Shown: positions 6,016-59,335, counted from the first letter of the stretch. The stretch is DNA of 64,000 nt from IMGVR_UViG_3300046516_001816:220984-284983, one strand, 5' to 3'. Made by a program: numbers and translations. The notes: generated by a model from the letters alone, not told the origin.

Positions 6016-6121
6016 CATACAGGCTAGGCTGGGGGCAACCCTGGCCTAGCCTTTTATGCCCCCTTTTTTCTTTCTATAAATACAAGTATTTAACCCTAAA
6101 ACAACGATTCTAGAAAAAGTC

Positions 6122-6143
6122 AAACATATATACTACCCGTGAG
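6122..6143 (+). promoter_or_regulatory. putative phage early promoter (TATATTAC-like)
   Basis: AT-rich region with TATACTAC, one mismatch to the phiKZ early consensus TATATTAC; same TATAT-N8-TGAG layout as the 27214 site. Confidence 0.5.
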
Positions 6144-6202
6144 CTTAGTCCAATGAAGACAGCTCAAACCCTTTATAACGCAATAAACCAAGGAGTAGTA
6201 AA

Positions 6203-6658
6203 ATGAACGCACTTCAAATGATCGGTCGCCGTGGCTTTGACGCAGCAACAAACGGTGCAGCGCTGGCTGCTGAAGGCATCATCGAAGGTACGGTGACGCT
6301 GGTCGATACCGCCGGCAACGTGATTGCCGAAGGCGTGCCGGCTACCTTCACCGAGACGCTCGGTGACAAGGTGAAGAAGGTCGCCACCAACAAGTACGTC
6401 ATCGGCAGCGTGGCCGCTGTCGCTGTGGCGGCTGCTGCGTACGGTACGTACCGTTTCCTGAATCGTGACAAGAAGAAGGTCACGAAGAAGGACAAGGGTC
6501 ACGACTTCATGAAGTCCGCGGAGCACGTGGTCGAGATGACGGAAGATCAGGCTGCGGAAGCGGTCGAGCTTGCTCGTGCCAACCTGCAAGCCGCAGAAGC
6601 TGTCCTCACCAAGAGCAAGGCCAAGAAGGCAGGCAAGAAGGACACCGCAGCTGCGTAA
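6203..6658 (+). CDS. small Ala/Lys-rich single-TM membrane protein
   Basis: AAACCAAGGAG leader; TM VIGSVAAVAVAAAAYGTY; basic tail. Confidence 0.85.
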   Translation: MNALQMIGRRGFDAATNGAALAAEGIIEGTVTLVDTAGNVIAEGVPATFTETLGDKVKKVATNKYVIGSVAAVAVAAAAYGTYRFLNRDKKKVTKKDKGHDFMKSAEHVVEMTEDQAAEAVELARANLQAAEAVLTKSKAKKAGKKDTAAA

Positions 6659-6723
6659 GCTAGCGGAGTAGGAACGGGGGGAGCGCTGAGCTCCCCTTCT
6701 TTCAATCAGTTGGAGAAAAGAAC

Positions 6724-6921
6724 ATGAACGGTCTGAAGGCTTTTGGCATTGGCGTAGGCGCAACAGCAGGGATCATCATCGGCGTCTATGCAGGCGTCAA
6801 GGGCATCGAGATGATCGGTTACATGGCAGCAAAGCGCGAAGGCGCAATGCAAAAGCGCATGGATAAAGAGTTTGATCGTCGGGTCGACGAAGCAGTCAAG
6901 CAGAAGTTGTTCCAGGCTTAA
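6724..6921 (+). CDS. small Gly-rich membrane protein
   Basis: GGAG RBS; FGIGVGATAGIIIGVYAG. Confidence 0.75.
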   Translation: MNGLKAFGIGVGATAGIIIGVYAGVKGIEMIGYMAAKREGAMQKRMDKEFDRRVDEAVKQKLFQA

Positions 6922-6973
6922 CCTCAACACCAATAACACATCTAAACCAACTGTTAGGGAAAAGGAAATCATC

Positions 6974-7405
6974 ATGTCGAACGCACTCAAAGTAGCCGCA
7001 GCAGTCGCAGGTATCGCAGCCGTCGGTGCAGCCACGTACTACGGTCTGCGCAAGTACGAAGATCACAAGTTCAACAAGTGGGTCGATGAGAGCCACGGTA
7101 AGGCCAAGGCCAAGGTCGGCGGTGTGGAGGAGTTCAAGACCACGACCGAGAAGACGAAGGAAGATGGCAAGGTGTTCGTGAAGACGGTGTCGGTGCGCGA
7201 GACGGCGGATGCCACCACGACGATCGCGACGCATGCCACGCAGAATCGCAAGCTCGGTATGAACATGGCCAGCACGCTGACGGTCACGGTGCCGAAGGTG
7301 GAAGTGAAAGCAAAGCCGGTCGTGAAGCACGTGACCCGCAAGCCCGCCGCGAAGACCCCGGCTGTGAAGACCGCAGCCAAGCGCACCCTGAAGAAGGCTG
7401 CGTAA
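6974..7405 (+). CDS. single-TM protein with Lys/Ala-rich C-terminal tail
   Basis: AAGGA RBS; MSNALKVAAAVAGIAAVGAATYYG; KPAAKTPAVKTAAKR tail. Confidence 0.85.
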   Translation: MSNALKVAAAVAGIAAVGAATYYGLRKYEDHKFNKWVDESHGKAKAKVGGVEEFKTTTEKTKEDGKVFVKTVSVRETADATTTIATHATQNRKLGMNMASTLTVTVPKVEVKAKPVVKHVTRKPAAKTPAVKTAAKRTLKKAA

Positions 7406-7480
7406 CGTAAGCCGGCCACCTTCGGGTGGCCTTGTAGTTTTCTCCGCAATAAATCCAAACCAATCTTCAGGAGTAGCAAA

Positions 7481-7741: not shown

Positions 7742-7824
7742 AGCGCAGTTCTCCCCCAACAACCCAGCATCCAAGCAGGCGTTCACGAAGAGCGCCTAGT
7801 TAAACACATTCAAGGAGTAGGAAC

Positions 7825-8025
7825 ATGTCGGCATTGAAAGACGTTGCAAAGTGCGCAGCCATTGGTGTAGCCGTGGGCGCAGGTGTGATCGGTGGTTTCT
7901 ACGTGGGTGGCAAGCTCTGCAATGCAAGCTTCAAGGCAGCAGACTGGACCAAGTCGAAGTTCTCGAAGAACAAGGCTGCCCAGGCCGACGCCGCACCCGC
8001 TGAGACGCAAGCCGCAGCGAGCTAA
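7825..8025 (+). CDS. small Gly-rich membrane protein
   Basis: AAGGAG RBS; AAIGVAVGAGVIGGFYVGG. Confidence 0.8.
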   Translation: MSALKDVAKCAAIGVAVGAGVIGGFYVGGKLCNASFKAADWTKSKFSKNKAAQADAAPAETQAAAS

Positions 8026-8088
8026 TCCCCCCTCTCGTAGCGTGCCGGGGTTCGCCCCGGCCGCTATGCCGTTAAACTGGAGAGCGTA

Positions 8089-8596: not shown

Positions 8597-8662
8597 GCAG
8601 TAAGTCATAATACCCGGGCCTCTTCGGAGGTCCACACATAAACCAAGACTAGGAGCATCACC

Positions 8663-9274: not shown

Positions 9275-9320
9275 TTGCAGGGGTGTCATCCGGCACCCCC
9301 GTTCTTTTAAGGAGAACAAC

Positions 9321-9972: not shown

Positions 9973-10182
9973 ATGGTCCGCCGCATCGATGCTATTCCCG
10001 CGTTTCAATCGTTTCAGCAATACCTGAATCAGGCGCCTGCACAACCTCTTGTGAAAGGTGTGGTAAAGGCGCAGTTGAACGAGCTTCCGAGCTCGACGCA
10101 TGTCGTGATTTCCGCTGAAGGTCGCCGTCGTTTGGCCGCCGCTCAGTTGGAAGCACGGGTGCCTTACGACATCGAACTGTAA
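9973..10182 (+). CDS. small hypothetical protein
   Basis: AGGAGG RBS; followed by a terminator. Confidence 0.75.
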   Translation: MVRRIDAIPAFQSFQQYLNQAPAQPLVKGVVKAQLNELPSSTHVVISAEGRRRLAAAQLEARVPYDIEL

Positions 10183-10204: not shown

Positions 10205-10231
10205 GAGGGGCCTTCGGGTCCCTCTTTTTTT
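10205..10231 (+). terminator. rho-independent terminator
   Basis: GAGGGGCC-TTCG-GGTCCCTC plus T-tract. Confidence 0.85.
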
Positions 10232-10266
10232 GTTTAATCCTGTGTCTTTTACAGGAGATCCTTGCT

Positions 10267-12472: not shown

Positions 12473-13093
12473 GTGAGTATTATTCAAACGTCCCGTAAAG
12501 AGTTGGCCGACCGCGTACAAGTCCACGATGGACTGATTCCTGTCGGCCTGCAAGAACACCTCACCGCCCTGGTGACCAAGCCCATTTGGGCGCATGGCTG
12601 GAAGTCCAATGCCGAGAACGACAAGTATTCGTTCTGGCACGCCCACTTCGCCGGCGGCGATCTGCACAACCGTGTCAGCTGCGAAACCGAGCTTGACGAG
12701 AAGGGACCGGTGGCGGTGGCTCGCCTCTGGGATCTGCTGAGGAAGACGATTCTGCAAGGTCATGAGCCGTTGCGTGCGTACGGCAACGCCCACACGTTTG
12801 GCTGTGAGGGCTACATCCATGTCGACAATCGAGACAGCGACAACTATTTCTCGACCATCATCTATACCAACAAGAACTGGAAAGCCTGGTGGGGTGGTGA
12901 AACGCTCTTCTACGGACTGGACCAGAAGGACATTATCAAGGCCTGTGCCGCGCTGCCGTTTCGGATCGTGACCTTCCCGGGACATATCCCGCACAAGGCC
13001 AACGCGCCGGCGCGCGACGTGCCCGACCTGCGCACATGCATCGTGTTCAAGTCGCACCTGAAACAGGCCCCGGCACAACCGACGGAGGTGTAA
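12473..13093 (+). CDS. 2OG-Fe(II) oxygenase paralog
   Basis: IHVD, WWGGET, IPHK, LRTCIVFK; GTG start inferred. Confidence 0.85.
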   Translation: MSIIQTSRKELADRVQVHDGLIPVGLQEHLTALVTKPIWAHGWKSNAENDKYSFWHAHFAGGDLHNRVSCETELDEKGPVAVARLWDLLRKTILQGHEPLRAYGNAHTFGCEGYIHVDNRDSDNYFSTIIYTNKNWKAWWGGETLFYGLDQKDIIKACAALPFRIVTFPGHIPHKANAPARDVPDLRTCIVFKSHLKQAPAQPTEV

Positions 13094-13094
13094 C

Positions 13095-13610
13095 GTGCTT
13101 GTGGACCGTGAAAAAATCATGGCCTTTTTAGAGGCTCACCATGCCTCTACGGCCGGTCACAGTGGTAGGACCTTCCTGCGCCATTTGGAGGGCACTGAGC
13201 GCATTCTAAGGGACTGGGGATGCCCTCAACACTTGCAGCTGGCTGGATTGTTCCATTCGATCTATGGGACGAACATTTTCACGGTTCAAAGCGCGTCGTT
13301 TGGTGAGCGCGAAGTGATCTCGTCCTTGATTGGACCGATCGGCGAATGGTTGGCGTATCTGTTTTGTGTGACGGCGCGACCCGATGCCTTCTTCATTGCC
13401 AAGACCTCCAAGAGCATGCGGCATCGCTACACGCAGATGCCCATTGCGGTGCGTGACGATGATTTGCGTGATCTGTTTCTGCTCGAAGCGGCGAACCATA
13501 TCGAACAGAACATGAACCCTCCGCTCGTGAAACGCATCCACGACCTCTACCAAGACGATCCTACTGTTACCGACGCCGCCAAGTACGGGATGTGGGAATT
13601 CTTTAGCTAA
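13095..13610 (+). CDS. HD-like DUF6817-type protein
   Basis: HSGRTFLRHLEGT...WG...AGLFHSIYGT signature. Confidence 0.7.
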   Translation: MLVDREKIMAFLEAHHASTAGHSGRTFLRHLEGTERILRDWGCPQHLQLAGLFHSIYGTNIFTVQSASFGEREVISSLIGPIGEWLAYLFCVTARPDAFFIAKTSKSMRHRYTQMPIAVRDDDLRDLFLLEAANHIEQNMNPPLVKRIHDLYQDDPTVTDAAKYGMWEFFS

Positions 13611-13615
13611 GAACA

Positions 13616-14116
13616 ATGAAAACCATTCTCTACCATGGTTCTGGGTTTGACCAGGACGAACTGATGCCAGGCTTTTTACGCTCCGGCAAGCTGGTGCAGT
13701 GGGATCAAACGGAGTCGAACGAATGGCTCTACACGACGACCGACAAGCAAGAAGCGATCAGTCAGGCGTTCGCGTCGATGATCGAGAAAACCTACGAGAG
13801 CATGGGGTATGCCACCCACGGCAATCGGATCGAGATTCAGTTCCCGAAGGAAGTGGCGCCCAGTGTGGAGGAGTTGAAAAAGCTCCAGCTGTTCCTGTAC
13901 ACGATCCGTCTGGAGGACGAGGACGGGTGGGTCAAGAACAACAACGAACACAACCAGATCAAGACCGAGTGGAAAACGCAGTCGATTATCGATCGCAACA
14001 TCATCCACAAGGAACAGATCGATCTGGCTGGGTGGCTCGCAAACAAGCAATTGGATTTACGAGTGGGCGGTAAGGCGAATAATCCGAACGCCGCACCCGG
14101 TTGGTTACTCTGGTAA
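13616..14116 (+). CDS. jumbo-phage hypothetical protein (N-terminal LYHGS)
   Basis: 166 aa; the YHGS start resembles ADP-ribosyltransferase-fold proteins, unverified. Confidence 0.7.
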   Translation: MKTILYHGSGFDQDELMPGFLRSGKLVQWDQTESNEWLYTTTDKQEAISQAFASMIEKTYESMGYATHGNRIEIQFPKEVAPSVEELKKLQLFLYTIRLEDEDGWVKNNNEHNQIKTEWKTQSIIDRNIIHKEQIDLAGWLANKQLDLRVGGKANNPNAAPGWLLW

Positions 14117-14293
14117 TAGAGGTCAGGCTTCGGCCTGGCTTTTATGCCGACTGAAAGAAATCTCAGAAATATATAATGTCCTTGGTATCCCTGGATAAAA
14201 ATATACCCCAGGACCATCTATGAGAAGAGGGGGTTTCCCCTACCTATGCCGTCTCTTCATTCAATCAAGCAACGAAACCAAGGAGTCGTACAA

Positions 14294-16138: not shown

Positions 16139-16257
16139 CGCGCGCTGGGCCCCGGGCTTCGGCTCGGGGCTGTATGCCGTTGGGTAGTTTTGTCCACCCC
16201 CGAGATCGTATGAAAAGGGGGTAAATATTATCTTACAACAAACCAAAGGAAACGAAC

Positions 16258-16833
16258 ATGTCCCACTCTCTCGAAAGTCAACACCTGGTGGAAGTCGATA
16301 AGCTTCTGAAGCTGTCGATGAGCGGAAGCTGGTTCTTTAAGAATCAGATGCAGGACTATGCAGACGAAAGCGAAATCGCTGAAATCGCCAAGCGCCTGGA
16401 TACGCTCTACGACCAGGGCGTGAAACACAACGCGGGTCGCAGCTTTAACCCGAAGTACCAGTTCCATCGGGTCGCCGATATGGACACGCAGACCCCCAAG
16501 GTCTACTTGCAATTGCTGCTGCCGGGCAACCATTTCAACGCTGCCAAGTTGGTCGGCGAGATTTGCCTGCATCTGAGTCTCGAAGACCACGGATGCATCC
16601 GACTCTCGCTGCCGCTGGAAACGGCTGCGCAGAAGTTGGCACGGGAGCATCACTGGAAGGTGTCAGAGGCTGAGTTGGAGGCACTCACCACGCTCATCGA
16701 AGCAGCAAAAGCGCTCCAGGACCTGGGCAGTAAGAATCTGCCCGTGACGCTGGATGTCGGTCGCGACGGTGTGAAGATCAGCACCGGCTATTATAATCCG
16801 GTTGACCAAGTGCGGGCTGCACTCGCTCGCTAG
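16258..16833 (+). CDS. hypothetical protein
   Basis: AAAGGA RBS; 191 aa. Confidence 0.8.
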   Translation: MSHSLESQHLVEVDKLLKLSMSGSWFFKNQMQDYADESEIAEIAKRLDTLYDQGVKHNAGRSFNPKYQFHRVADMDTQTPKVYLQLLLPGNHFNAAKLVGEICLHLSLEDHGCIRLSLPLETAAQKLAREHHWKVSEAELEALTTLIEAAKALQDLGSKNLPVTLDVGRDGVKISTGYYNPVDQVRAALAR

Positions 16834-16858
16834 GTTGACCACTTTCAACCATTCGGCC

Positions 16859-17248: not shown

Positions 17249-17316
17249 GCTTTACCCAGGGGCTGCGGCTCCTGGGCTTTATGCCGTCTAATTAATCTAA
17301 ACCAAGGAGTAGAATC

Positions 17317-17553: not shown

Positions 17554-17700
17554 CGATCTCAGTGCGGGAGACCAGAGCCCCAGAGAGGGCCGTAGTAACC
17601 TTAGTGCCTGAGAGGCAGTAAGCAAGTGCAAGACGGCATAAAGCCCTCCCCGCAAGGGGAGGGCCTATGCTTAGCCTTCTTTTTTTGGTTTCAAACCCAA

Positions 17701-22384: not shown

Positions 22385-22528
22385 ATGAGTTGTCCTTCTT
22401 TTATTTTAGACCAGCCAGCCGACATAAACCAGGAGCCAGCCCAGGTAACCCCAAGTAGGAAAGGGTTACCTGGAGCTGACTCCCAACTAGAACTACTGTT
22501 TCACATTATTTACAAGCGAGTATGTTGC

Positions 22529-27054: not shown

Positions 27055-27213
27055 CGACGGAGTGGAAAAGTGAAAGGGTGAGTGATTCGCAGTGGCTCGC
27101 TACACGGGAGTCGCTGCCCTTTCACAGTAGAATCAGACGTACGCTGGGGCTTGGCCTCTGTCTGCCCTTCGGGGTGGGCAGAGGCCTCTATGCCGTCAAT
27201 TTATTTTTGGTTA

Positions 27214-27230
27214 TATATTACCTACCTGAG
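27214..27230 (+). promoter_or_regulatory. putative phage early promoter TATATTAC
   Basis: Exact TATATTAC (phiKZ early consensus) upstream of the operon carrying the non-virion RNAP subunit. Confidence 0.6.
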
Positions 27231-28483: not shown

Positions 28484-30127
28484 ATGGATGATGGACTGAT
28501 CTATCGGATCGAAGAGTATATGCCGAAGCTGAATCCGGCGATAGCGAACGGCTTCGCATCTTACCAGATGACCGAACACAACGTCGTCAAGTATATCGAC
28601 AGCGTGTTTCGTTCGGCAGCCAAAGGGTTCCCCGAAGGTTTGACCTACGAAGGCTGCCGGCGCTGTACGCCCCTGGAAGACTTCAACGAGTCGTCCAAGA
28701 AAAAGGGCAATAACAAACGTACCTTCGATGTCGCGGTCTCGTACACGTACATGATGAAATATCTGTTCAAGTACAAGGGCGAAGACATCACGCGCTTTAT
28801 CAATCTGCCGTTTGTCGGCGATGCGGGCTCGATCGTGATGAGCGGCTCGCGCTTCAATATCTCACCCGTGCTCTCCGATCGGGTGATCTCCGTGGGCACC
28901 GAAACCGTCTTCGTGCGTCTGCTGCGCGATGTGCTCACCTTCCAGCGGGTTCCCCAGAACATCAACGTCAATGGCCTGCGTGAACAGGTCAACGTCGCGT
29001 GGGCGATGATTTACCACAAGTCCGCGAAAGACAAGCGCATTCGTCCGACGGTCAAGATGCATTCGACCATGGTGCATTACTTGTTCTGCAAGTACGGTCT
29101 CATGAAAACGTTCGAGATGTTTGCGCGCTGTACGCCGGTGATCGGTGGTCCGGAAATCAACACCAATACCTATCCGGCTGACGAGTGGGTGATCATTGCG
29201 TCGACTCAGATCAAACCGAAGGGCTGCGGCAAGGGCCTGTATGAACCGACCAATCTGCGTGTGGCGGTGCATAAAACGGATTGGTCGCGCATGATGGTGC
29301 GCAATCTGATTGGGGGGCTGTTCTATGTCGCCGATCACTTTCCGGGTCGCGTGCGCGCGGAGTATATCAACAACACGGACCCCAAGTGGATGGATAACAC
29401 CAGCACCTGGATCAGTCTGATGGGCTGGGTGATCTGGGGCGGCAACCAGCACGAAGGCGTGTTGCGCGAACGGGTAGAAGAACACCTGCGATCGCTGGAT
29501 GAATACATCGACAATATTGTCCTGGACAAGTTCCGTCAGATTGGAGTGCAAGCCACCGATCTGTATCAGTTCATGGCAGTTATCATCGAGAACATCACCG
29601 ATATGCTGCACAAAGCGAGTGATAAGGTCAACAGCATGTACGACAAGGAACTGTCGGTGCTGTACTTTGTGCTCAAAGATATCACGAGCGAGATCTTCAA
29701 GCTGTACTTCAAACTGAAGGCGGCGAGCAAGAAGGAGCTCACGAAGAAGGATATCGACGAGCGCATGAACAAGACCATCTCGATGGGGCGCATTTTCAGC
29801 ATCACCAAACAGCACCCAGAAGTCACGACCATCAGTAGTTCGGGTGACAATATGGCGCTGAAGATCACCGGGGTGTTGGTGCCACAGTCGAGTAGTTCCA
29901 AACAGTCGGGTCGCAAGGACCGGGTGGTGATTGATGATCCGTCGCGCTTTCTGCATGTGTCGTATGCAGAGATCGGTGGCTATTCGAATCTGCCCAAGTC
30001 CGACCCGATTGGTCAGTCGCGGATCAGCGGCTGGTGCGAGACCGACCCCGATGGGCTCGTGCTGCGTCGTCCGAAGTTCTACGACATGCTCAATGCGTAT
30101 CAAGACCAGATCCGCAGACGGCGTTAA
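28484..30127 (+). CDS. non-virion RNA polymerase beta subunit, N-terminal part (phiKZ gp123-like)
   Basis: INLPFV..GSRFNISPVLSDRVIS, LHVSYAEIGG, PIGQSRI; position downstream of the capsid gene. Confidence 0.8.
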   Translation: MDDGLIYRIEEYMPKLNPAIANGFASYQMTEHNVVKYIDSVFRSAAKGFPEGLTYEGCRRCTPLEDFNESSKKKGNNKRTFDVAVSYTYMMKYLFKYKGEDITRFINLPFVGDAGSIVMSGSRFNISPVLSDRVISVGTETVFVRLLRDVLTFQRVPQNINVNGLREQVNVAWAMIYHKSAKDKRIRPTVKMHSTMVHYLFCKYGLMKTFEMFARCTPVIGGPEINTNTYPADEWVIIASTQIKPKGCGKGLYEPTNLRVAVHKTDWSRMMVRNLIGGLFYVADHFPGRVRAEYINNTDPKWMDNTSTWISLMGWVIWGGNQHEGVLRERVEEHLRSLDEYIDNIVLDKFRQIGVQATDLYQFMAVIIENITDMLHKASDKVNSMYDKELSVLYFVLKDITSEIFKLYFKLKAASKKELTKKDIDERMNKTISMGRIFSITKQHPEVTTISSSGDNMALKITGVLVPQSSSSKQSGRKDRVVIDDPSRFLHVSYAEIGGYSNLPKSDPIGQSRISGWCETDPDGLVLRRPKFYDMLNAYQDQIRRRR

Positions 30128-33125: not shown

Positions 33126-33209
33126 GTTTGCCGCGGTCCTTTGATTCGAGGAGGCTTCGGCCTCCTTTTTCTTTTATGCTGGTCGCACAAATTTAAACCA
33201 AGGTTCGTC

Positions 33210-33803: not shown

Positions 33804-33880
33804 GCTGACGGCATAGAGCCCGGCCCCCACATGGGGAGCCGGGCCTTTATGCCGCCTTCTTTTTTTGGCTTCAAACGAGC

Positions 33881-43241: not shown

Positions 43242-43286
43242 GCAGACAGCATAGAAGCCCGGCCAAGCGCCGGGCCTTTATGCCGC

Positions 43287-49667: not shown

Positions 49668-52556
49668 TTACGACGAGAGGTTCCAAGCCGAGAAGCCCGA
49701 CGGCACTGCGTTGGTAAACGCATTGACGCCTGGATTGAGCGTGAGCGTATCGCCCTTCTCGGAGATCGACACGCCGAGGTACACCGGACCGGTCGTGCCG
49801 CCCGGGGCGAGAATCGCCGCGATCGAGATACCGCCCGTACCGGTGGCCGGGTTTTGGTTCGCGAGGATGTCGCCATTCCACTGACCCGAAGCCGGGTTGT
49901 AGAACCACACCTTCTGCGCGGCGAAGTCCACCGCTACGCCGAGTTCGTCGCCTGTGGCGGGCAGGGTGGCCCCGATGCCGCCATTGGTGAACGCACCGTT
50001 GTAGCTGATGCCGCTGGTGGCGGTCGACGGCTGCGTGAACATCATGATCGAGTTCGTATCGAAGCCGAGCGAGTGCGTGCCGGCGGTGCTGGCATTGCCC
50101 AGACCGAAACCCACCCCGCCATCGAGACTGTTGATCGACACTTCTGCGTAGACCTTGCCCGTGGTGCGACCGTAGGTGGCGAGCTCCGTGCGCCAGGCAT
50201 TGCTGGTATTGCTGGTGACCGTCATGTTGCCATTGGAGAGCACCATGTCGGACGGCAACACCGTCACGTTGAAGCTCATCGCGGTCGTCGCCGGCGGCGT
50301 CGTACCCGAGTTGTTCACAGCCTGGACCACGGTCTTGAACGCGGTGGTCAGCTGCGACACGACGTTGTTCAATTCCGACACGGTGGCAAAGGTTTCGGCC
50401 ACCGCGTAGATGATCCCAGCCGGTGCGGTGTTTTGCACCGAGATCGAGCCCAGGAAGTTGTTGTTGTACTCGCTGAAGCCATTGACCGTGATCTGGTTGG
50501 CGCCGCCCGGCGTTTGCATCCACAGCGTGGCGAGCTTGGTCCCGGAATTCACCGTGTAGCCAAACTTCACCGTCGTGGTGTTGCGTCCCGTGAGCGAGAG
50601 CACTTGCAGCTCCACGCTATCCGCCGAGGCGGTGTTACGCACCGACATGCGCACGTACCACGAACCCGATTGCGTGTCGCCCGTGGCATCGCCACCGGTC
50701 ACCAGCATCTGCAAGTCCGGATAGACGGTTTGACCCGCCGTGCCTTGCATCGCCATTTGCGCGATCGGGGTCCAGAGCAACGGATCCGTCGTATCAACTG
50801 CGGCCGGAATCGTGTCCTGCGGGGTGACCATTTGACTGGTCCACAACTGAGCATTGGTCGACGCCGTGATCGAGCTCGAGAGGGCTGCTTGCGACAGACC
50901 ATTCAAAGCCGTCGCGTTGGCTGCCGTCCCACTCAGAATCGCCGAGGTCAGCTGCGCTTGCGTGAGACCAAACGCTTGCGTGGCATTGGCTGCGGTGCCC
51001 GACAGGATCTGTGTGGTGAGCGCCGCAATCGTCATGCCGCCCAGCTGGTTAGCGTTCGCCGCCGTACCGTTCAGGATCTGCGTGGTCAACTGCGCCACCG
51101 TCATGCCGTTGAGCTCCGTGGCGTTGGCCACCGTCGCATTCGCAATGTAGGTATCCCATTGCGCCGGGGTCATGCCGCCGAACATTTCCGAGTCGCTTGC
51201 CGTGCCACCGGAGACGTACGAGATCAGCTGCGCGGGCGTCATGCCGCCCACCATCGTCGCGTTGTTCGCCGTACCAGCCAGAATAGCGGACGTCACCTGC
51301 GCCATCGTCTGGCCACAGAAGAGCGACGTGTCCGCTGCCTTACCCGTCTTGAGCAAGTAGCTCGCCAGCGTGCTGTCCATCTGAGCCGTCGAGTAGGCTC
51401 CGACTTGCGCTGCCGTCACCTGGTGAGGGTTGGCATAGTTCGTAATGTGGGTGTTGAGCACCGCATTCGAACCCTGGTTCGCAATGGCCGCCGCGGTTGC
51501 CGCCGGCGTCATGAACAGGTTGTTGGCCGTGCCTGCGACCGCATCGCTATTTTGCGCGACACTGAAGTTCGGCACATTGCCCAAGCCCACTTGCGCCGCA
51601 CTGGTTTGGTGCGGGTTGTTGTAGTTGAGAATGTGCGCTTGCAGGTTATTGCCCACCGAACTGTTGATCGCGACCATGGTGGTGGCCGGGGTCATATACA
51701 GATTCGTGGCCGTGCCCGTCTGGGCATCGGTGTTGCTCGCCGGTGCGTAGTTCGCGACATTGCCCAGCCCGACCTGCGTTTGCGTTACGCGGTGCGGATT
51801 GTTGTAATTGGCAATGTGAGCGTTAAACGAACCCAGCACCTGCGTTTGGATCGCCGCGGCGGTGGCCGCCGGTGTCATATACAGCGTCGTCGACGTGCCC
51901 GCTGCCGCGTCGCTGTTTTGCGCCACCGCGTAGTTCTGGACATTGCCCAGCCCGACTTGCGCGGAGCTCACATGGTGCGGGTTGCCGAAGTCGGCTTCGT
52001 GCGCAGCCAAGCCCGTGGAGCCGGTCGATTGCAGTGCGGTCGTGACGCTGTTAATCGCCCCCACCACGCTACCCATATTAACCATGTCATTCACGTCCCA
52101 CGCATGCGCGGTGGGCGGGAACGCATAGGGCGTACCACTGACTTCTTCCCACGACGTGATGCGCGGGTTGTCCGCGACGTCGGCGAGAATCGTGTTGATC
52201 TGGGAGGTCGCCACCGTCCACTGTCCACCAACGGTTTGGTAGTTCAGCTTAACGATGCCAGCCAGATTCGTGTTGATAAACAAAAGCGAACCGTAGACGC
52301 GCATAGCGGTCGAACGGCTGGCCGAGATAAACCAATGCGCCGGGTAATAATCGACGCCTTCCTCCAAGGTGTGCAGGGTACCCTGCGTGTCTTGATAGGT
52401 AACAGCGAGCGTATCAGCGAAGTACGGGGCAAACTCCGGCACGATGATGTGCTGATCCCGAAAGTTCTGCGCGACCAGTTGCTGCTGTTCCCCTGAAATC
52501 AGGTTCGAAACCAACGAACCCGTCGGGTCGAACGGATATGAGATGGGTGTTGTCAT
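49668..52556 (-). CDS. tail fibre protein with C-terminal SPRY/B30.2-like domain
   Basis: YPFDPTG N-domain; NPH..QVGLGNV.N repeats; GTA.NA repeats; GKVYAEV..GFGLG..LGVAVD..VWFYN. Confidence 0.8.
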   Translation of the reverse strand: MTTPISYPFDPTGSLVSNLISGEQQQLVAQNFRDQHIIVPEFAPYFADTLAVTYQDTQGTLHTLEEGVDYYPAHWFISASRSTAMRVYGSLLFINTNLAGIVKLNYQTVGGQWTVATSQINTILADVADNPRITSWEEVSGTPYAFPPTAHAWDVNDMVNMGSVVGAINSVTTALQSTGSTGLAAHEADFGNPHHVSSAQVGLGNVQNYAVAQNSDAAAGTSTTLYMTPAATAAAIQTQVLGSFNAHIANYNNPHRVTQTQVGLGNVANYAPASNTDAQTGTATNLYMTPATTMVAINSSVGNNLQAHILNYNNPHQTSAAQVGLGNVPNFSVAQNSDAVAGTANNLFMTPAATAAAIANQGSNAVLNTHITNYANPHQVTAAQVGAYSTAQMDSTLASYLLKTGKAADTSLFCGQTMAQVTSAILAGTANNATMVGGMTPAQLISYVSGGTASDSEMFGGMTPAQWDTYIANATVANATELNGMTVAQLTTQILNGTAANANQLGGMTIAALTTQILSGTAANATQAFGLTQAQLTSAILSGTAANATALNGLSQAALSSSITASTNAQLWTSQMVTPQDTIPAAVDTTDPLLWTPIAQMAMQGTAGQTVYPDLQMLVTGGDATGDTQSGSWYVRMSVRNTASADSVELQVLSLTGRNTTTVKFGYTVNSGTKLATLWMQTPGGANQITVNGFSEYNNNFLGSISVQNTAPAGIIYAVAETFATVSELNNVVSQLTTAFKTVVQAVNNSGTTPPATTAMSFNVTVLPSDMVLSNGNMTVTSNTSNAWRTELATYGRTTGKVYAEVSINSLDGGVGFGLGNASTAGTHSLGFDTNSIMMFTQPSTATSGISYNGAFTNGGIGATLPATGDELGVAVDFAAQKVWFYNPASGQWNGDILANQNPATGTGGISIAAILAPGGTTGPVYLGVSISEKGDTLTLNPGVNAFTNAVPSGFSAWNLSS

Positions 52557-52651: not shown

Positions 52652-53902
52652 ATGTACACATTGCAGAGCGCGCTCGGAAAGTCACTTTCTGGCGGCCAAC
52701 AGTGGAGCGCAATCGATTTGAGTGGCATGACGTTCGCTACCGTCGTTGAAAACTATTCCGTGGTTTACGCTGTACTCACCAATCCGTTCCTTGCGGGACC
52801 GGTGAGTTTGAACCTGAATAGCATTCTGCCCACAATCACTAACCAGCAACAAACCTTCGGCGCGTATCTGGCGAGCCTGGGCAATAAGGCCTTGCCCACC
52901 TCTACCAGCATTCCGTCGATCAAGACGCAATACGCACGCTATCAGGATGGCGTGAAGGCAGGCTACACGATTCAGCCAATTGGCACCACGCAGTCCTTGC
53001 AGTATGGGGCGACCATTGCCAACAAGCCCGATGTGTTGCTCACCCGGGCCAACACCAACTACACGACGTTCTACCAGAGTTGTCTGGTGTCGATCAATGG
53101 ATTCTTCCATATGACCGATACCGATGGCAAGACGGGCGTGTGGGTGACCAACGGCATGGCGAGTTGCGTGAAGTCTAAAAAGAACAAGCTCGGCATTCTG
53201 AATTTTCAGGATCTGGGTAAGCTTACGATGATCCCGATTACGGGCGACATGATCTACAAGCAGAACACGAGCCAGGCGCTCAAGAACCGCGCGTATCTGA
53301 ATGTCGGCAAGGATCTGTCCAACTCGACCGTGATGGTGGTGATTGGCGGCTACTTGCATATCCTCGATGGCAAGACGTTCAAGCTGGTGGGTAAGCAGTC
53401 GCTAATGATCGATTTCAACAACTACCCGCTCTTTGAACGCTACTACGAGTCGAAGGATTTCATTGACCTCTCGACGCTCGCGTTCACGGCCTACCCGACC
53501 AATGCGCAAGCGGTGGCGGTCGACGAGATCACCTCCGACGCCGCGATCAAGGCGCTGCTGACACTCTCGCAATCCTTTATCGTGCTGCTGGATAACACCC
53601 AGATCTCGGTGCAGTTGGAGAAAGTGCGCGCGGCCAAGATTCCCGGGCAGTACGTGAGCTACGTGGAACCGATCTGGCCGTTGATTACGGGCTACGGCAA
53701 GGTGAACGAATACTGGTCGGTGCAAGATGCCGGGCAGTGGGCGCTCTACGTGGAGGACAATATCCAGCCGAATTACGTCTTCAATACGGTGGATACCTCA
53801 CGCAAGCAAGAGACTATCACGGATCAACGCGATCCGATGCGACCCACCAGGGTGAGCCTCGGGCATTACTTGCAGATCAGCTGTGATGTGAGTTTTAGCT
53901 AA
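52652..53902 (+). CDS. virion structural protein
   Basis: GGAG RBS; CLVSINGFFH, VVIGGYLH, LTLSQSF motifs recalled from a phiKZ-like structural family. Confidence 0.7.
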   Translation: MYTLQSALGKSLSGGQQWSAIDLSGMTFATVVENYSVVYAVLTNPFLAGPVSLNLNSILPTITNQQQTFGAYLASLGNKALPTSTSIPSIKTQYARYQDGVKAGYTIQPIGTTQSLQYGATIANKPDVLLTRANTNYTTFYQSCLVSINGFFHMTDTDGKTGVWVTNGMASCVKSKKNKLGILNFQDLGKLTMIPITGDMIYKQNTSQALKNRAYLNVGKDLSNSTVMVVIGGYLHILDGKTFKLVGKQSLMIDFNNYPLFERYYESKDFIDLSTLAFTAYPTNAQAVAVDEITSDAAIKALLTLSQSFIVLLDNTQISVQLEKVRAAKIPGQYVSYVEPIWPLITGYGKVNEYWSVQDAGQWALYVEDNIQPNYVFNTVDTSRKQETITDQRDPMRPTRVSLGHYLQISCDVSFS

Positions 53903-53941
53903 CGGCATAGAGGGCGGGCTGCGGCCCGCCCCTTATGACCC

Positions 53942-54931
53942 TTAGTTGTACCGCAGGTTCGGTGCGGTAATCGAGGCGGTCGCGGCAATCGTGACTGCCG
54001 ACACGCCCCCCTTGACGTCCATATCGCCCAGCAGTTCGGTCTGACCCGCAATGGTGATCTTGCCCGTGCCCGCGGTGGATCCTTCTCCACCGCCGGCTTT
54101 CGTGGTCATATCGCCATTCAGACCCAGCGCACCATTTTCCGTGAAGTCCCCGGTGTGCGTGGTGGTGGCCTTGATGCCAAACGTATTGCTATTGATCGTG
54201 GCGGTTTGCGTGTCGAGGCTGAACCGCTTGGTCTTCAGGGCAATCGAGTCCTGCGTGGTGAGCGCCATCTGCTGCTTCAAGATTTGCAGCACCGACTGGT
54301 CACCATTGCCAAATTCAAAATGGTTCTGGGTGGAGTCCAGCAGCGCGTAATTCCCGATGTCGTCCTGCATCCGGAAATATCCTTCCTTGGTGTTCAACTG
54401 GATGTCGTACCCATAAGGCTCCCCATTGGCTTTGGACGTGTGCAGCGTAATCATCCCCGTATGCGTGCTGATTTCAATATAGTAGCTGGAGTCCGCATCG
54501 GTGGATTTGCTTTCATCGCTGGTCCCACTGAAGGCCCACACCACGGTTTCCAGCTTGCGCAGGCTCGAATCATCGAGCATGGTGGTCCAGTAATACGTGT
54601 CGGCATCCCCAAACTGGTAGAGGGCGACCTGCGCGCCGCGCCGAATATCGGGACTGGTCTTGCGATTGCCCTGACCGAGCTTAAGCCACGTGGCTTTGAT
54701 GGTCACGGAAGAGGCAACTTGGGTGCTGTACTGACCCCCAGCATTGTCCGTGCCTTGCGCTTGCACGGGGGTGCCGGCGTCGGTCAGCTGACCATCCACA
54801 AACGGCAAATGTTCGATCGGTGTGACTTCCACTTCATCACTGGACATGGGTTTGTTATTGGCGACCACGCCGACGCTATAGAAGCGCAGCTGCGACGCTT
54901 GCGGGTGCTGATTGGTTGGGCGACTGGCCAT
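53942..54931 (-). CDS. baseplate central spike-like protein (phiKZ gp164-like)
   Basis: YSVGVVANNK, ATWL...NRKTSPDIRRG, LRKLET, beta-helix-like C-terminus; divergent from sbcC. Confidence 0.65.
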   Translation of the reverse strand: MASRPTNQHPQASQLRFYSVGVVANNKPMSSDEVEVTPIEHLPFVDGQLTDAGTPVQAQGTDNAGGQYSTQVASSVTIKATWLKLGQGNRKTSPDIRRGAQVALYQFGDADTYYWTTMLDDSSLRKLETVVWAFSGTSDESKSTDADSSYYIEISTHTGMITLHTSKANGEPYGYDIQLNTKEGYFRMQDDIGNYALLDSTQNHFEFGNGDQSVLQILKQQMALTTQDSIALKTKRFSLDTQTATINSNTFGIKATTTHTGDFTENGALGLNGDMTTKAGGGEGSTAGTGKITIAGQTELLGDMDVKGGVSAVTIAATASITAPNLRYN

Positions 54932-57525: not shown

Positions 57526-57644
57526 TGAATCAAGACTATTATTCAGGCCTCTCGTCGGTTGCTGTTTTACCGGACGGACGAGAGGTCGTGACGCACTATC
57601 CGATCCTTGGACCGGAGTCTTTTGAAATCAGAAACGGAAAAAAC

Positions 57645-58703
57645 ATGGCCATCACGAAAGAAGAACTTTTTAAAGAACTGAGCGCAGCGCATCAGCAATT
57701 CACCGAAGCCACCCGGCGCGTCTTTATGTTGATGATGCAGGTGCAGAACATGCCGGACTTCGACGCTGCGTTGGAATTCGTGCGTCAACACAAGGCGGGA
57801 CTCACGCAGCTTCCGCCGATGGGATCGGCCTCGGCGCAAGCGGCACCGGGGCTGTCGTTCAATCCGACCAGCCATCCGCATGATCGTTCGGGTCATACAG
57901 ACGGTGTCGGGGTTCAACCGACGGCTGCCGCCGCCGCAGCCGCCGCCTCGTCGGCCGCCGCGACCAAGCTCTTCGAGACACAAGCGATCGTCGCCCCGGC
58001 GGAAACGATCACGAACCTGACGGGTCAGAAGCCGGCCGAAGCACACGTGTGGCAACTGAATACGGCAGAAACGGTGAACGCCGGTGCTGCGGAGCAGGTC
58101 CCGCAAGGCAACGAGGTGGTAGCCGGCGCACTGGCCGATGCCAAGGGTGTTGTCACGCAACTCCTGAAGGACAAAGGACTGCCCGCTGAAGTCATTGCGA
58201 TGGTTGAGCAGGTCAGCGTGCAAGATCTTCTCAATCGCGGCAAAGTGGTCACGCCCCCGCAACTGCCGGCCGGTCCGACTGAAGTCGTCGATGCCGTGCA
58301 AGAACCCAGTCCGTTGCAACTGCTGGTGGGCATGGGTAGTGTCTTCTGTGAGTATCTGCATCCGGATGTGATTCGCGGCGGTCAGGGTGAGATTCAGCCC
58401 AAGTGCAACGATGACATCAAGCGTTACTCGCAGGACGCGATGATCACGGAGATCAAGACGCTCATCGGCTACCCGACCGGTTTCTACACGAACTCGCAAA
58501 GCAAGGCGATGCAGTTCTTCGTGAAGACCGATCAGTTCCTGGCCGTGGTCGACGGGTTGCCCTCGGAAGTCGCGCCGCTGTACATCCACTTCCTGGGTGA
58601 CCCGACCGGCTGGACGCATGCTCAAAACCTGGGACCGAGCGAGCTGCGCCTGATTCATTCGAAGCTCGACTTCGTGTTGGGCGGCGTAAAAAAAAAGAAC
58701 TGA
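57645..58703 (+). CDS. hypothetical protein with Ala-rich linker
   Basis: Start at ATG 57645 inferred (ORF opens at 57525). Confidence 0.7.
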   Translation: MAITKEELFKELSAAHQQFTEATRRVFMLMMQVQNMPDFDAALEFVRQHKAGLTQLPPMGSASAQAAPGLSFNPTSHPHDRSGHTDGVGVQPTAAAAAAAASSAAATKLFETQAIVAPAETITNLTGQKPAEAHVWQLNTAETVNAGAAEQVPQGNEVVAGALADAKGVVTQLLKDKGLPAEVIAMVEQVSVQDLLNRGKVVTPPQLPAGPTEVVDAVQEPSPLQLLVGMGSVFCEYLHPDVIRGGQGEIQPKCNDDIKRYSQDAMITEIKTLIGYPTGFYTNSQSKAMQFFVKTDQFLAVVDGLPSEVAPLYIHFLGDPTGWTHAQNLGPSELRLIHSKLDFVLGGVKKKN

Positions 58704-58741
58704 CTGGCACCCCACGCGCGCTCGGTGAAAGCATTGACGCA

Positions 58742-59167
58742 GTGAACTACGCGGGGCGACCCGCGGAGCTCGGTCAGGCGTACTTGCCGTACTTCGGTGA
58801 GGGGGGCATTTTCGAACGCTACCTCTCGCCGAATCTGATTGAAAATGGCAAGGGTACCATTCAGGCCTTTGGTGACCTCAAGCAGTACTCGTACGACGTC
58901 TTTGAGATGATCAAGCACGCGGGCATTGGTGAGGTGCGCACGGGCTTTTATCTGTCACCGGAGAACCAGATCCAGTTGTTCGTGAATCTGGGCATGGGCG
59001 CGGTAATCTATGAGGGCCTGCCGAGTAGCCAGGGCAAGGTCACGTTCGATTACTACGGGGACGCGTTGGGACTGCGTGGGTTTGATGTCACGCCCTATCA
59101 CATCAAAGCGGAACTGCTGAGGGATCTGAACGAAGCGTTCAAGATGCTGACGCAAGAAATGGAGTAA
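58742..59167 (+). CDS. hypothetical protein, similar to the C-terminal domain of the upstream gene
   Basis: Shared YS.D...TGFY...Q.FV pattern. Confidence 0.65.
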   Translation: MNYAGRPAELGQAYLPYFGEGGIFERYLSPNLIENGKGTIQAFGDLKQYSYDVFEMIKHAGIGEVRTGFYLSPENQIQLFVNLGMGAVIYEGLPSSQGKVTFDYYGDALGLRGFDVTPYHIKAELLRDLNEAFKMLTQEME

Positions 59168-59170
59168 TGG

Positions 59171-59287
59171 ATGTCGTTTTTCAAGAAGTCGTTTTTCAAG
59201 AAGCGTAGGAATGTCGTGGATGTAGCGGTTCTGTCGACTTGGGTGGTGTTGATTGCGGTGGTGATTCAATCCGGTCATCACATCTGA
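59171..59287 (+). CDS. small single-TM peptide (38 aa, not in ORF track)
   Basis: GGAG RBS; MSFFKKSFFKKRRNVVDVAVLSTWVVLIAVVIQSGHHI; 15-bp tandem duplication at the start. Confidence 0.5.
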   Translation: MSFFKKSFFKKRRNVVDVAVLSTWVVLIAVVIQSGHHI

Positions 59288-59335
59288 GTTAGCGGCATAG
59301 AAGCCCGGCTTGTGGCCGGGCCTTTATGCCGTCGA

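What the first reader, a model, noticed from the sequence alone, without database searches (positions are those of the whole stretch)
6021..59331. Window-wide hairpin+TATGCCG element with orientation logic
Seen: about 13 intergenic GC-rich hairpins with unrelated stem sequences are followed within a few nt by TATGCCG or a close variant rather than a long U-tract (6021, 8044, 14121, 14228, 16149, 17255, 27153; minus strand at 22419). Between convergent genes the motif occurs on both sides (GCATA...hairpin...TATG at 17634, 33809, 43247, 53903, 59293), so each strand reads hairpin then TATG. Knowledge: TATG is the phiKZ late-promoter core. Inference: a phage-RNAP-specific terminator, RNA processing/stability signal or protein-binding site, distinct from the host-type U-tract terminators also present (1441, 10205).
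Basis: partly seen in the sequence, partly recalled or inferred. Interest (0 to 1): 0.6.

Follow-up and report, generated by a model that had tools for sequence, protein, structure and literature searches.

The report
phiKZ-type hairpin-TTATGCCGT transcription terminators
The hairpin-plus-TATGCCG elements are real and are this jumbo phage's version of the conserved transcription terminator already mapped in phages phiKZ and 201phi2-1, so the finding is correct but largely ordinary.

Summary
The window is the last 64 kb of a 285-kb, 57% GC, phiKZ-like jumbo phage genome.

TATGCCG occurs 15 times in the window against 6 expected. Thirteen of those follow a GC-rich hairpin directly, in the context YTT-TATGCCG-T.

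Genome-wide there are 56 intergenic elements:
- 52 lie about 27-70 nt after the stop of a same-strand gene.
- 15 of 17 convergent gene junctions carry one.
- 0 of 17 divergent junctions do.
- The mirrored, two-sided form is largely confined to convergent junctions.

The tail matches the published phiKZ terminator motif (hairpin + YTTATKYYGT, Putzeys 2024) and 201phi2-1 "motif A". It is the top enriched post-hairpin word in this genome, FLC9, RP12, phiKZ and Goslar. It sits at orthologous places, for example after the major head gene in nine phages.

In phiKZ, mapped RNA 3' ends fall 0-6 nt into TATGYY. Late transcription starts map to other TATGs further downstream. The orthologous 201phi2-1 terminator also stops host RNA polymerase in a reporter assay.

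So this is a terminator, not a promoter, and phage-polymerase specificity is not supported. Why the tail is conserved remains open; a sequence-specific pause is my inference. It is a new member of a known kind. No RNA data were available for this phage.

The parts
6021..6061 (+). Terminator element: 14-bp GC-rich hairpin, then TT, then the tail TATGCCC, then a T-run. It lies 40 nt after the stop of gene 5755-6015.
   Evidence: Fold energy -28.5 kcal/mol. Context.
8040..8071 (+). Terminator element: hairpin plus tail TATGCCGT, 40 nt after gene 7825-8025.
14122..14149 (+). Terminator element: hairpin with a TTCG loop, then TTT-TATGCCG, 27 nt after gene 13664-14116.
   Evidence: It is the only one of these elements that the generic U-tract scan also flagged.
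14228..14251 (+). Doubtful copy. TATGCCGT follows only a 4-5 bp GGGG/CCCC stem, about 100 nt after the previous element and just upstream of gene 14294-16138.
   Evidence: The minimum-energy fold places the tail inside a larger loop. It fell below the -14 kcal/mol cut-off.
16148..16179 (+). Terminator element: 10-bp hairpin with a TTCG loop, then G-TATGCCGT, 35 nt after gene 14294-16138.
17255..17286 (+). Terminator element: hairpin, then CTT-TATGCCGT, 32 nt after gene 16886-17248. The motif TAAACCAAGGA and the next gene follow it.
17634..17672 (.). Two-sided terminator between convergent genes 17317-17553 (+) and 17701-20238 (-). The minus strand reads hairpin then TATGCCGT. The plus strand reads hairpin then CTATGCTT, followed by a T-run.
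22420..22470 (-). Doubtful copy. The tail TTTATGTCG lies 17 nt downstream of the hairpin at 22444-22470, between the tandem minus-strand genes 22529-24073 and 20291-22384.
   Evidence: It does not meet the spacing seen in the other elements.
27153..27195 (+). Terminator element after the major head protein gene (24844-27054): 15-bp hairpin with a TTCG loop, then TC-TATGCCGT. It is positionally orthologous to phiKZ T057 and to the 201phi2-1 3' end at 132,419.
27213..27220 (+). Early-promoter-like box ATATATTA(C), 18 nt after the terminator tail. The same terminator-then-TATATTAC arrangement stands after the major head gene in phiKZ, Phabio and others.
   Evidence: The phiKZ early promoters P017 and P028 show the same layout.
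33148..33181 (+). Variant element: hairpin, then TTTCTTT, then the tail TATGCTG, 50 nt after gene 32787-33125.
33809..33854 (.). Two-sided terminator between convergent genes 33210-33803 (+) and 33881-36799 (-, virion protein). TATGCCG is read after the hairpin on both strands, and a T-run follows on the plus strand.
43247..43285 (.). Two-sided terminator between convergent genes 42117-43241 (+) and 43497-44120 (-). The plus-strand tail is TATGCCG and the minus-strand tail is TATGCTG.
53903..53940 (.). Two-sided terminator between convergent genes 52652-53902 (+) and 53942-54931 (-). The minus-strand tail is TATGCCG and the plus-strand tail is TATGACC. The phiKZ orthologue of the plus-strand gene is flanked by the mapped terminator pair T059/T060.
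59293..59331 (.). Two-sided terminator between convergent genes 59171-59287 (+) and 59336-60601 (-), with TATGCCG on both strands.
1437..1475 (+). U-run terminator (hairpin plus T-run) after gene 442-1422. It represents the second tail class.
10205..10232 (+). U-run terminator (hairpin with a TTCG loop, then T7) after gene 9973-10182.
28484..30127 (+). Gene for the homologue of phiKZ GP123, the beta-like subunit of the non-virion RNA polymerase. GP123 holds the pocket that binds non-template TATG at promoters. This is context for the mechanism, not part of the element.
   Evidence: tblastn gave 30% identity, E = 4e-79. Pocket residues are partly conserved. The structural source is PMC12809450.

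Best explanation
These are the transcription terminators of a phiKZ-like (nucleus-forming, Chimalliviridae-type) jumbo phage. They belong to the conserved class first mapped in phiKZ and 201phi2-1.

Anatomy. Each has a GC-rich stem-loop of arbitrary sequence, often with a UUCG loop. A short U-rich stretch containing a fixed A (YUUUAU) follows directly, and then G-Y-Y-G-U, which here is nearly always GCCGU.

How it works. The transcript folds into the hairpin while the polymerase sits on the weak UUUAU hybrid. RNA is released within or just after UAUGYY, about 7-10 nt past the stem.

Placement. Where two genes converge, the tail is present on both strands, so a single palindrome stops both transcripts. 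Where genes run in tandem, the tail is present only on the transcribed strand. A promoter for the next unit often follows within 10-40 nt.

What is shown and what is inferred.
- Shown here: the anatomy, the enrichment, the orientation rule, conservation across phages, and orthologous placement.
- Shown elsewhere for orthologous elements: RNA 3' ends in the tail, and termination in a reporter assay.
- Inferred: that the GYYG part acts as a sequence-specific pause that compensates for the short U-tract.
For: (1) Anatomy and enrichment. Of 96 strong hairpins within 150 nt after a same-strand gene end, 48 carry a TATG tail and 21 a U-run.

(2) Orientation.
- 52 of 56 intergenic elements follow a same-strand stop codon (p = 1e-11).
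- 15 of 17 convergent junctions carry one against 0 of 17 divergent.
- The mirrored CATA is present at 16 of 19 convergent elements but only 6 of 33 tandem ones (p = 5e-6).

(3) Same motif as the published terminators. The tail fits the phiKZ motif BCCYCCCCHWWDGGGRRGGBYTTATKYYGT and the six reported bidirectional terminators (PMC10914365). It also fits 201phi2-1 motif A.

(4) Unbiased word enrichment. Among 5-mers found after hairpins, TTATG and TATGC rank top in this genome, FLC9, RP12, phiKZ and Goslar.

(5) Orthologous placement. Genes followed by an element here have orthologues followed by one in the relatives:
- FLC9: 8 of 16 against 9 of 85
- RP12: 6 of 9 against 10 of 48
- phiKZ: 6 of 12 against 5 of 31
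The element after the major head gene is present in nine phages, each with a different stem.

(6) Mapped RNA 3' ends in phiKZ. In the 70-168 kb stretch, 18 of 42 hairpin+TATG elements have a mapped 3' end. All lie 0 to +6 nt from the T of TATG, with the mode at +5.

(7) Reporter assay in 201phi2-1. The mapped 3' end at 132,419 is base 7 of TTATGTTGT after the major head gene. That terminator outperformed lambda T0 in vivo.

(8) Conservation past the RNA end. It extends to G at +6 and T at +7, beyond the mapped 3' end. This points to recognition during transcription rather than in the released RNA.
Against: - No RNA data exist for this phage in the tools. No sequencing run was listed, so termination at these exact sites is inferred by homology and placement.
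- My gene calls are a home-made codon-usage caller, not a curated annotation.
- Long-read 3' ends cannot separate termination from processing.
- The tail has too few U's for a textbook intrinsic terminator. A generic U-tract scan flags only one of the thirteen.
- Four of the 56 elements point against the local gene direction.
- The pause mechanism has no direct support.
Confidence: 0.85

Rival explanations
1. The tail's TATG is a late promoter. The element is then a terminator-promoter cassette in which the non-virion polymerase starts at the G of TATG, directly after the hairpin.
For: - TATG with G as +1 is the phiKZ late-promoter core. It is bound in a pocket of GP123.
- The GP123 homologue is encoded in the window and keeps part of that pocket.
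Against: - 0 of 17 divergent junctions carry the element. At convergent junctions a start there would only make antisense RNA.
- None of the 59 mapped phiKZ promoters I read starts at the tail's G. Late starts lie at a second TATG 5-25 nt downstream, as in P016, P049 and P054.
- This genome shows the same layout. A separate ATTTTATG stands 10-20 nt after six terminators.
- The GC-rich hairpin DNA occupies the stretch that must melt at a late promoter.
Confidence: 0.05
2. The element is an RNA processing or stability signal rather than a terminator. A nuclease cuts in the single-stranded UUAUG, and the hairpin then protects the new 3' end.
For: - ONT 3' ends and reporter read-through assays do not separate cleavage from termination.
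- UUAU is A/U-rich single-stranded RNA next to a stem, the kind of site RNase E prefers (my own knowledge).
Against: - The strict one-strand or two-strand logic tracks the direction of transcription.
- Conservation extends past the mapped 3' end, to G at +6 and T at +7.
- ARNold classed most phiKZ copies as intrinsic terminators.
- The motif is conserved across phages of Pseudomonas, Burkholderia, Ralstonia, Xanthomonas, Escherichia and Erwinia, which argues for a phage-borne or universal reader.
- In these phages transcription is thought to take place inside a protein shell that excludes most host proteins (my own knowledge).
Confidence: 0.08
3. The palindromes are binding sites for a DNA- or RNA-binding phage protein, for example one involved in anti-termination, genome organisation or mRNA export. 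Termination would then be incidental.
For: - The conserved, non-U tail and the frequent palindromic symmetry would suit a sequence-specific binder.
- The authors of the 201phi2-1 paper speculate about anti-termination.
Against: - Symmetry is largely confined to convergent junctions, 16 of 19 against 6 of 33. It therefore reflects two transcripts rather than a dimeric binder.
- The orthologous element terminates in uninfected cells with no phage protein present.
- Stem sequences are unrelated.
Confidence: 0.04
4. The elements are a mobile or repeated palindromic family (REP- or MITE-like) that has spread through intergenic DNA.
For: There are many copies, all intergenic and all palindromic.
Against: - Stems differ completely in sequence, length (7-15 bp) and loop. 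Only the 9-10 nt tail is shared.
- Copies sit at orthologous positions in phages that share only 28-53% protein identity.
Confidence: 0.01

Closest known systems
phiKZ conserved terminator motif (Putzeys et al. 2024, microLife, PMC10914365): BCCYCCCCHWWDGGGRRGGBYTTATKYYGT, 61 copies, 6 bidirectional pairs
   Same: - It has a GC-rich stem-loop followed directly by YTTATKYYGT. The window's CTT-TATGCCGT fits that tail letter for letter.
- It has two-sided versions between convergent genes.
- It has the same position after the major head gene and other orthologues.
- A promoter follows within tens of nucleotides.

   Different: - YY is almost always CC here, in a 57% GC genome, but T-rich in phiKZ at 37% GC.
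- Stems here do not follow the CCYCCCC/GGGRRGG preference.
- No RNA 3' ends have been mapped for this phage.
201phi2-1 terminator 'motif A' (PMC11512511)
   Same: - The hairpin-plus-TTATG tail is the same.
- The copy after the major head gene, with its 3' end at 132,419, is the positional orthologue of window 27153-27195.
- That copy was validated in a terminator trap.

   Different: In 201phi2-1, motif A often co-occurs with a second motif that lengthens the stem. I did not look for that here.
Canonical bacterial intrinsic (Rho-independent) terminators, including bidirectional ones
   Same: - Both have a GC-rich hairpin followed by a U-rich stretch.
- Release occurs about 7-10 nt past the stem.
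- Both have palindromic two-way versions between convergent genes.
- The orthologous phage element works with host polymerase.
   Different: - The U-tract is only 3-4 U long and is interrupted by an invariant A.
- It is followed by a conserved G-C-C-G-T, which has no counterpart in the bacterial consensus.
- Generic scanners miss 12 of the 13.
phiKZ late promoter core TATG (Yakunina 2015, PMC4666361; GP123 pocket, PMC12809450)
   Same: It has the same four letters, which the phage's own polymerase reads in the non-template strand.
   Different: - Starts do not map to the tail's G in phiKZ.
- No copies lie at divergent junctions.
- A GC hairpin lies upstream, not AT-rich DNA.

Membership tests
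phiKZ-type conserved terminator (hairpin + YTTATKYYGT) | A GC-rich stem-loop is followed within 0-4 nt by the tail YTTATKYYGT. | tested here: met
   - 13 of 15 TATGCCG in the window, and 46 of 65 in the genome, follow a strong hairpin.
- The logo is YTT-TATG-CCGT.
- The spacing between stem and tail is 0-4 nt.

phiKZ-type conserved terminator (hairpin + YTTATKYYGT) | The element lies downstream of gene 3' ends, in the sense orientation, and is mostly intergenic. | tested here: met
   52 of 56 intergenic elements lie 27-207 nt after a same-strand stop codon, mostly 27-70 nt. Gene calls are my own.
phiKZ-type conserved terminator (hairpin + YTTATKYYGT) | Overlapping bidirectional pairs occur between convergent genes. 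| tested here: met
   - All 5 convergent junctions in the window carry the element, and 15 of 17 in the genome do.
- The mirrored tail is present at 16 of 19 convergent elements against 6 of 33 tandem ones.

phiKZ-type conserved terminator (hairpin + YTTATKYYGT) | The carrier is a phiKZ-like jumbo phage with its own multisubunit RNA polymerases. | tested here: met
   - The virion protein and the major head protein match FLC9, RP12, phiKZ and others.
- A homologue of the GP123 polymerase subunit lies at window 28484-30127.
phiKZ-type conserved terminator (hairpin + YTTATKYYGT) | RNA 3' ends accumulate in the tail and read-through drops. | not testable with these tools
   No sequencing run was listed for this genome. 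This is shown only for orthologous elements in phiKZ and 201phi2-1.
phiKZ-type conserved terminator (hairpin + YTTATKYYGT) | The stem follows the published consensus CCYCCCC...GGGRRGG. | tested here: not met
   Stems here vary: GCCCGGC, GGGCGGGC, CCCAGGGGC, GGCCTCTGTCTGCCC and others. I take the stem consensus to be a phiKZ habit and not a defining feature, because the stems also differ among the nine phages compared.
Canonical intrinsic terminator | A U-tract of about 7-9 nt, rich in U, stands directly after the stem. | tested here: not met
   The tail has 3-4 U in CUUUAUGCCGU. The generic scan (at least 5 T in 8) flags one of the thirteen.
Canonical intrinsic terminator | Termination is factor-independent with a multisubunit RNA polymerase. 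| not testable with these tools
   The 201phi2-1 orthologue terminates host polymerase in vivo. No in vitro test is known to me.
phiKZ late promoter (TATG, G = +1) | A primary 5' end lies at the G of TATG. | not testable with these tools
   There are no RNA data here. In phiKZ, none of the 59 promoters I read starts at a terminator-tail G.
phiKZ late promoter (TATG, G = +1) | The element stands upstream of the genes it drives, including at divergent junctions. | tested here: not met
   0 of 17 divergent junctions carry the element. At convergent junctions it faces the ends of genes.
REP/MITE-like repeated palindrome | Copies share the sequence of the palindrome. | tested here: not met
   Only the tail aligns; the stems do not.

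The most novel reading that the evidence does not exclude
The conserved tail may not be a degenerate U-tract. It could be a sequence-specific pause and release signal read by the phage's own multisubunit polymerases.

Two mechanisms are possible, alone or together:
- The non-template TATG drops into the same beta-lobe pocket (GP123; homologue at window 28484-30127) that recognises late promoters. The polymerase would then stall with the weak UUUAU hybrid just behind a finished hairpin.
- YY|G acts as a Y(-1)/G(+1) elemental pause.

This would be a terminator that borrows the promoter-recognition pocket. It would explain why the tail resembles the late-promoter core and why it stays constant from 37% to 57% GC genomes.
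Probability: 0.15. Interest if true: 0.65.

Novelty: new member of a known kind. Interest (0 to 1): 0.27.

Why it matters
Practical use:
- The motif gives a ready rule for annotating transcription-unit ends in phiKZ-like phages. Standard terminator finders miss most of these sites.
- In this genome the motif, together with the early-like ATATATCA boxes and the late-like ATTTTATG boxes that follow it, lets one sketch the operon map without RNA data.

Biology:
- The same 9-nt tail survives in phages of at least six host genera and across a 20-point GC range.
- It is replaced by TTTATTTT in SPN3US-like phages.
- This pattern suggests a constraint from the phage transcription machinery that has not been explained. 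It is worth a biochemical test, but it is not a new kind of element.

Tried and rejected
- Public RNA or DNA runs. None was listed for window 13000-18500, so read laying could not be used.
- Near-identical phage record. megablast found none. The record of this genome may have been left out of the collection.
- RNAalifold on 13 window elements aligned without gaps on the tail. It found no consensus stem, because stem length and register vary. I used per-sequence folding against random 40-mers instead.
- Rfam and tRNA scans of the window found nothing.
- The sigma70 promoter and U-tract terminator scans were not enriched over shuffles.
- A literature search for the literal motif returned only a primer in a Klebsiella jumbo-phage announcement, not a description.
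- No paper was found for phage FLC9, and the RP12 paper does not discuss terminators.
- Small-ORF reading of the tail (AUG CCG ...). I rejected it because no ribosome-binding site is possible inside the hairpin, the downstream frames are inconsistent, and the motif also reads on the antisense strand.
- Tail conserved as the 3' half of a longer stem. I rejected it because 27 of 33 tandem elements lack the complementary upstream half.
- Specificity for the non-virion polymerase. It is weakened because the phiKZ early unit TU018, which starts at early promoter P012, ends at a TATG-type terminator at 25242. That is a single direct case.


Full report
WHAT THE WINDOW IS

The window is bases 220,984-284,983 of a single 284,983-bp contig with 56.7% GC. 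Its large proteins match phiKZ-like jumbo phages.
- The virion protein encoded at 33881-36799 (minus strand) is 51% identical to Burkholderia phage FLC9 and 38% to Ralstonia phages RP12 and RP31. It also matches about 290 Pseudomonas, Erwinia, Salmonella and Vibrio jumbo phages.
- Gene 24844-27054 is the major head protein.
- Gene 28484-30127 is the homologue of phiKZ GP123, a beta-like subunit of the non-virion RNA polymerase.
- Two helicases lie at 20291-24073 on the minus strand.

No annotation was available. I called genes with a simple codon-usage model, which gave 307 genes at 90% coding. All placement statistics below rest on those calls.

TATGCCG occurs 15 times in the window against 6.1 expected, and no shuffle reached 15. 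Thirteen of these follow a GC-rich stem-loop directly, in the context YYT-TATGCCG-T/C. The other two, at 28234 and 28519, lie inside genes. The stems have unrelated sequences, 7-15 bp, often with TTCG loops, and fold at -17 to -31 kcal/mol.

- 14228 has only a 4-5 bp stem.
- 22419 on the minus strand has its tail 17 nt from the hairpin.

I found one extra variant at 33148-33181.

Genome-wide there are 65 exact TATGCCG. For 46 of them the 40 nt upstream fold below the 5th percentile of random 40-mers, against about 3 expected. No downstream flank folds that well.

I also started from hairpins instead of from the motif. Of 96 strong intergenic hairpins within 150 nt after a same-strand gene end, 48 have a TATG tail, 21 have a U-run and 27 have neither. 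Several of the last group are stems that swallowed the motif. The TATG-tailed hairpin is therefore the main class in this genome.

THE ORIENTATION LOGIC HOLDS AND POINTS TO TERMINATION

I counted 56 intergenic elements, defined as a hairpin followed by a tail within one mismatch of TATGCCG.
- 52 lie after the stop codon of a gene on the same strand, mostly 27-70 nt away. Four point against the local genes.
- 15 of 17 convergent junctions carry an element. None of the 17 divergent junctions does. About one in eight tandem junctions does (p = 1.5e-7).
- The mirrored half, CATA upstream of the stem, makes the other strand also read hairpin-then-TATG. It is present at 16 of 19 convergent elements but only 6 of 33 tandem ones, against a background of 3.5% (p = 5e-6).

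The tail is therefore put exactly on the strand or strands from which a transcript arrives. A promoter would be expected at divergent junctions and would make no sense facing the ends of two genes.

THE ELEMENT IS ALREADY KNOWN IN MODEL PHAGES

Putzeys et al. mapped 133 RNA 3' ends in phiKZ by ONT-cappable-seq. They reported a conserved terminator motif, a stem-loop followed by a TTAT region (BCCYCCCCHWWDGGGRRGGBYTTATKYYGT; 61 copies), and six overlapping bidirectional terminators between convergent genes (PMC10914365). The 201phi2-1 study found the same thing as its "motif A". The window's CTT-TATGCCGT fits YTTATKYYGT exactly.

I fetched the whole genomes of FLC9, RP12, phiKZ, Goslar and SEGD1 and asked, without using the motif, which 5-mers are enriched just after hairpins.
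- TTATG and TATGC rank top in this genome, FLC9, RP12, phiKZ and Goslar.
- In the SPN3US-like phage SEGD1 the top words are TTATT, TATTT and TTTTT, and TATG is not enriched.

Logos anchored on TATG give these tails:
- this genome: YTT-TATG-CCGT
- FLC9: YY-TATG-CC(G/C)T
- RP12: TT-TATG-C(C/T)G
- phiKZ: TT-TATG-YYGT

Pattern counts agree for Ea35-70 and Xoo-sp14. They show no enrichment in SEGD1 or in a Vibrio phage.

PLACEMENT IS CONSERVED WHILE THE STEMS ARE NOT

Genes that are followed by an element here have orthologues that are followed by one in the relatives:
- FLC9: 8 of 16, against 9 of 85 for genes without an element here
- RP12: 6 of 9, against 10 of 48
- phiKZ: 6 of 12, against 5 of 31

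The clearest case is the major head gene. A hairpin plus TTATG-YYGT lies about 100-135 nt after it in this genome, FLC9, phiKZ, 201phi2-1, RSF1, Xoo-sp14, Goslar, Ea35-70 and Phabio, each with a different stem. In most of these an early-type TATATTAC or TATATCA box follows. Kodama, SEGD1 and the Vibrio phage have TTTATTTT or U-run tails at the same place.

WHAT THE ELEMENT DOES IN THE MODEL PHAGES

I used the phiKZ supplementary tables (bioRxiv 10.1101/2023.10.13.562163, supplement 1) together with the genome sequence.
- In the 70-168 kb stretch, 18 of the 42 hairpin+TATG elements have a mapped 3' end. Every one lies 0 to +6 nt from the T of TATG, with the mode at +5, so the RNA ends ...UAUGYY.
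- Most of the unmatched elements are the antisense halves of palindromes.
- The element after the phiKZ major head gene is terminator T057, with its 3' end at 120,629.
- The phiKZ orthologue of window gene 52652-53902 is flanked by the bidirectional pair T059/T060.

In 201phi2-1 the 3' end at 132,419 is base 7 of TTATGTTGT after the major head gene. That terminator beat lambda T0 in a reporter driven by a host sigma70 promoter in uninfected P. chlororaphis. The element therefore does not need a phage polymerase.

None of the 59 phiKZ promoters I read (P008-P066) starts at a terminator-tail G.
- Late starts lie at a second TATG 5-25 nt downstream (P016, P049, P054).
- Early TATATTAC promoters lie about 30 nt downstream (P017, P028).

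This genome shows the same layout. ATTTTATG stands 10-20 nt after six terminators, and ATATAT(C/T)A boxes stand after several others, including the one at window 27213.

One phiKZ early unit, TU018 from promoter P012, ends at a TATG-type terminator. The virion polymerase therefore appears to use this terminator too.

HOW IT MOST LIKELY WORKS

The element works like an intrinsic terminator. The hairpin forms behind a weak rU:dA-rich hybrid (YUUUAU), and the RNA is released about 7-10 nt past the stem.

Two features are unusual: the fixed A, and the conserved G-Y-Y-G-T where more U's would be expected. Conservation reaches G at +6 and T at +7, beyond the mapped RNA end. In 27 of 33 tandem elements the tail has no complementary partner upstream. 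I therefore infer that the tail is read as sequence during transcription and does not act as part of an RNA structure. A pause signal is the simplest idea.

Two versions are possible, and both are inference:
- YY|G resembles the Y(-1)/G(+1) elemental pause of multisubunit polymerases. This rests on my own knowledge and was not tested.
- The non-template TATG could enter the GP123 pocket that binds the same four letters at late promoters (PMC12809450). The window's GP123 homologue keeps Ser144, Phe151, His331, Ser334 and Gln466, and aromatic residues at positions 185 and 406, but not Tyr399 or Asn398.

Use by early units and by host polymerase argues against a mechanism exclusive to the non-virion polymerase.

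VERDICT

The element is a new member of a known kind, the phiKZ-type terminator. It is described here for a Burkholderia/Ralstonia-phage-like lineage and shown to be shared by several other genera. The open question, why this tail and not a U-run, is modestly interesting.

LIMITS

- There are no RNA data for this phage.
- The gene calls are my own.
- I read only part of the phiKZ tables.
- ONT ends have a resolution of about 2 nt.

Noticed in passing
window 27213-27220; also G000 31165, 49725, 54584, 69247, 71395, 78749, 84025, 127658, 194034, 203254, 219488: The box ATATAT(C/T)A(C/T) occurs about 14 times in intergenic DNA. It reads on the plus strand at every site; at three palindromic sites it also reads on the minus strand. 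CCTNNCTGA often follows it, and GATTCAAAG often stands about 15 nt upstream. It resembles the phiKZ early promoter TATATTAC and the 201phi2-1 and RSF1 box TATATCATT. It is probably this phage's early (virion polymerase) promoter.
   Followed up: partly
G000 74002, 119649, 148595, 152694, 156815, 158943 (outside the window); window 5205: A second motif, ATT(T/C)TATG, stands 10-20 nt downstream of terminator tails and upstream of genes. This is the arrangement of the phiKZ late promoters P049 and P054, so it is a candidate late promoter of this phage.
   Followed up: partly
window 3697, 6184, 17298, 30188 (exact); 2771, 14274, 33194, 52757 (one mismatch): TAAACCAAGGA stands just upstream of many start codons: 8 copies against 0.5 expected. 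The conserved (C)TAAACC extends well beyond the ribosome-binding site AAGGA. It could be a leader or a start-site element.
   Followed up: partly
window 6063, 17679, 33860; genome-wide list: Runs of six or more T within 35 nt after intergenic hairpins occur 20 times on the plus strand and never on the minus strand. Intergenic runs of T7 or longer number 22, against 3 for A7 or longer. In nine of the 20 cases the run stands 7-27 nt after a TATG tail (consensus CTTCTTTTTTTGG), and several of these are at convergent junctions. The run may be a second release signal for units on the main strand, or an upstream element of the early promoters that follow. I did not resolve this.
   Followed up: partly
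window 14160-14265: A TATATAAT box at 14170 lies between the terminator at 14122-14149 and the weak hairpin+TATGCCGT at 14228-14251. About 65 nt of structured, non-coding sequence lies between the box and the weak element. This may be a small RNA unit.
   Followed up: no
window 44176-46680 (-) and 49668-52556 (-): Two large minus-strand genes share an N-terminal virion or tail-fibre-like domain (phrog_2163) and carry different repeat-rich C-terminal parts. They look like paralogous tail fibres.
   Followed up: no
many hairpins, e.g. window 14122-14139, 16148-16171, 27153-27186, 10205-10224: The loops are very often TTCG (the UUCG tetraloop), in both tail classes.
   Followed up: no
G000 65042, 128767, 158904, 203200 (minus-strand elements between plus-strand genes): Four elements point against the local direction of the genes. 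They may stop antisense transcripts, or my gene calls may be wrong at these places.
   Followed up: no
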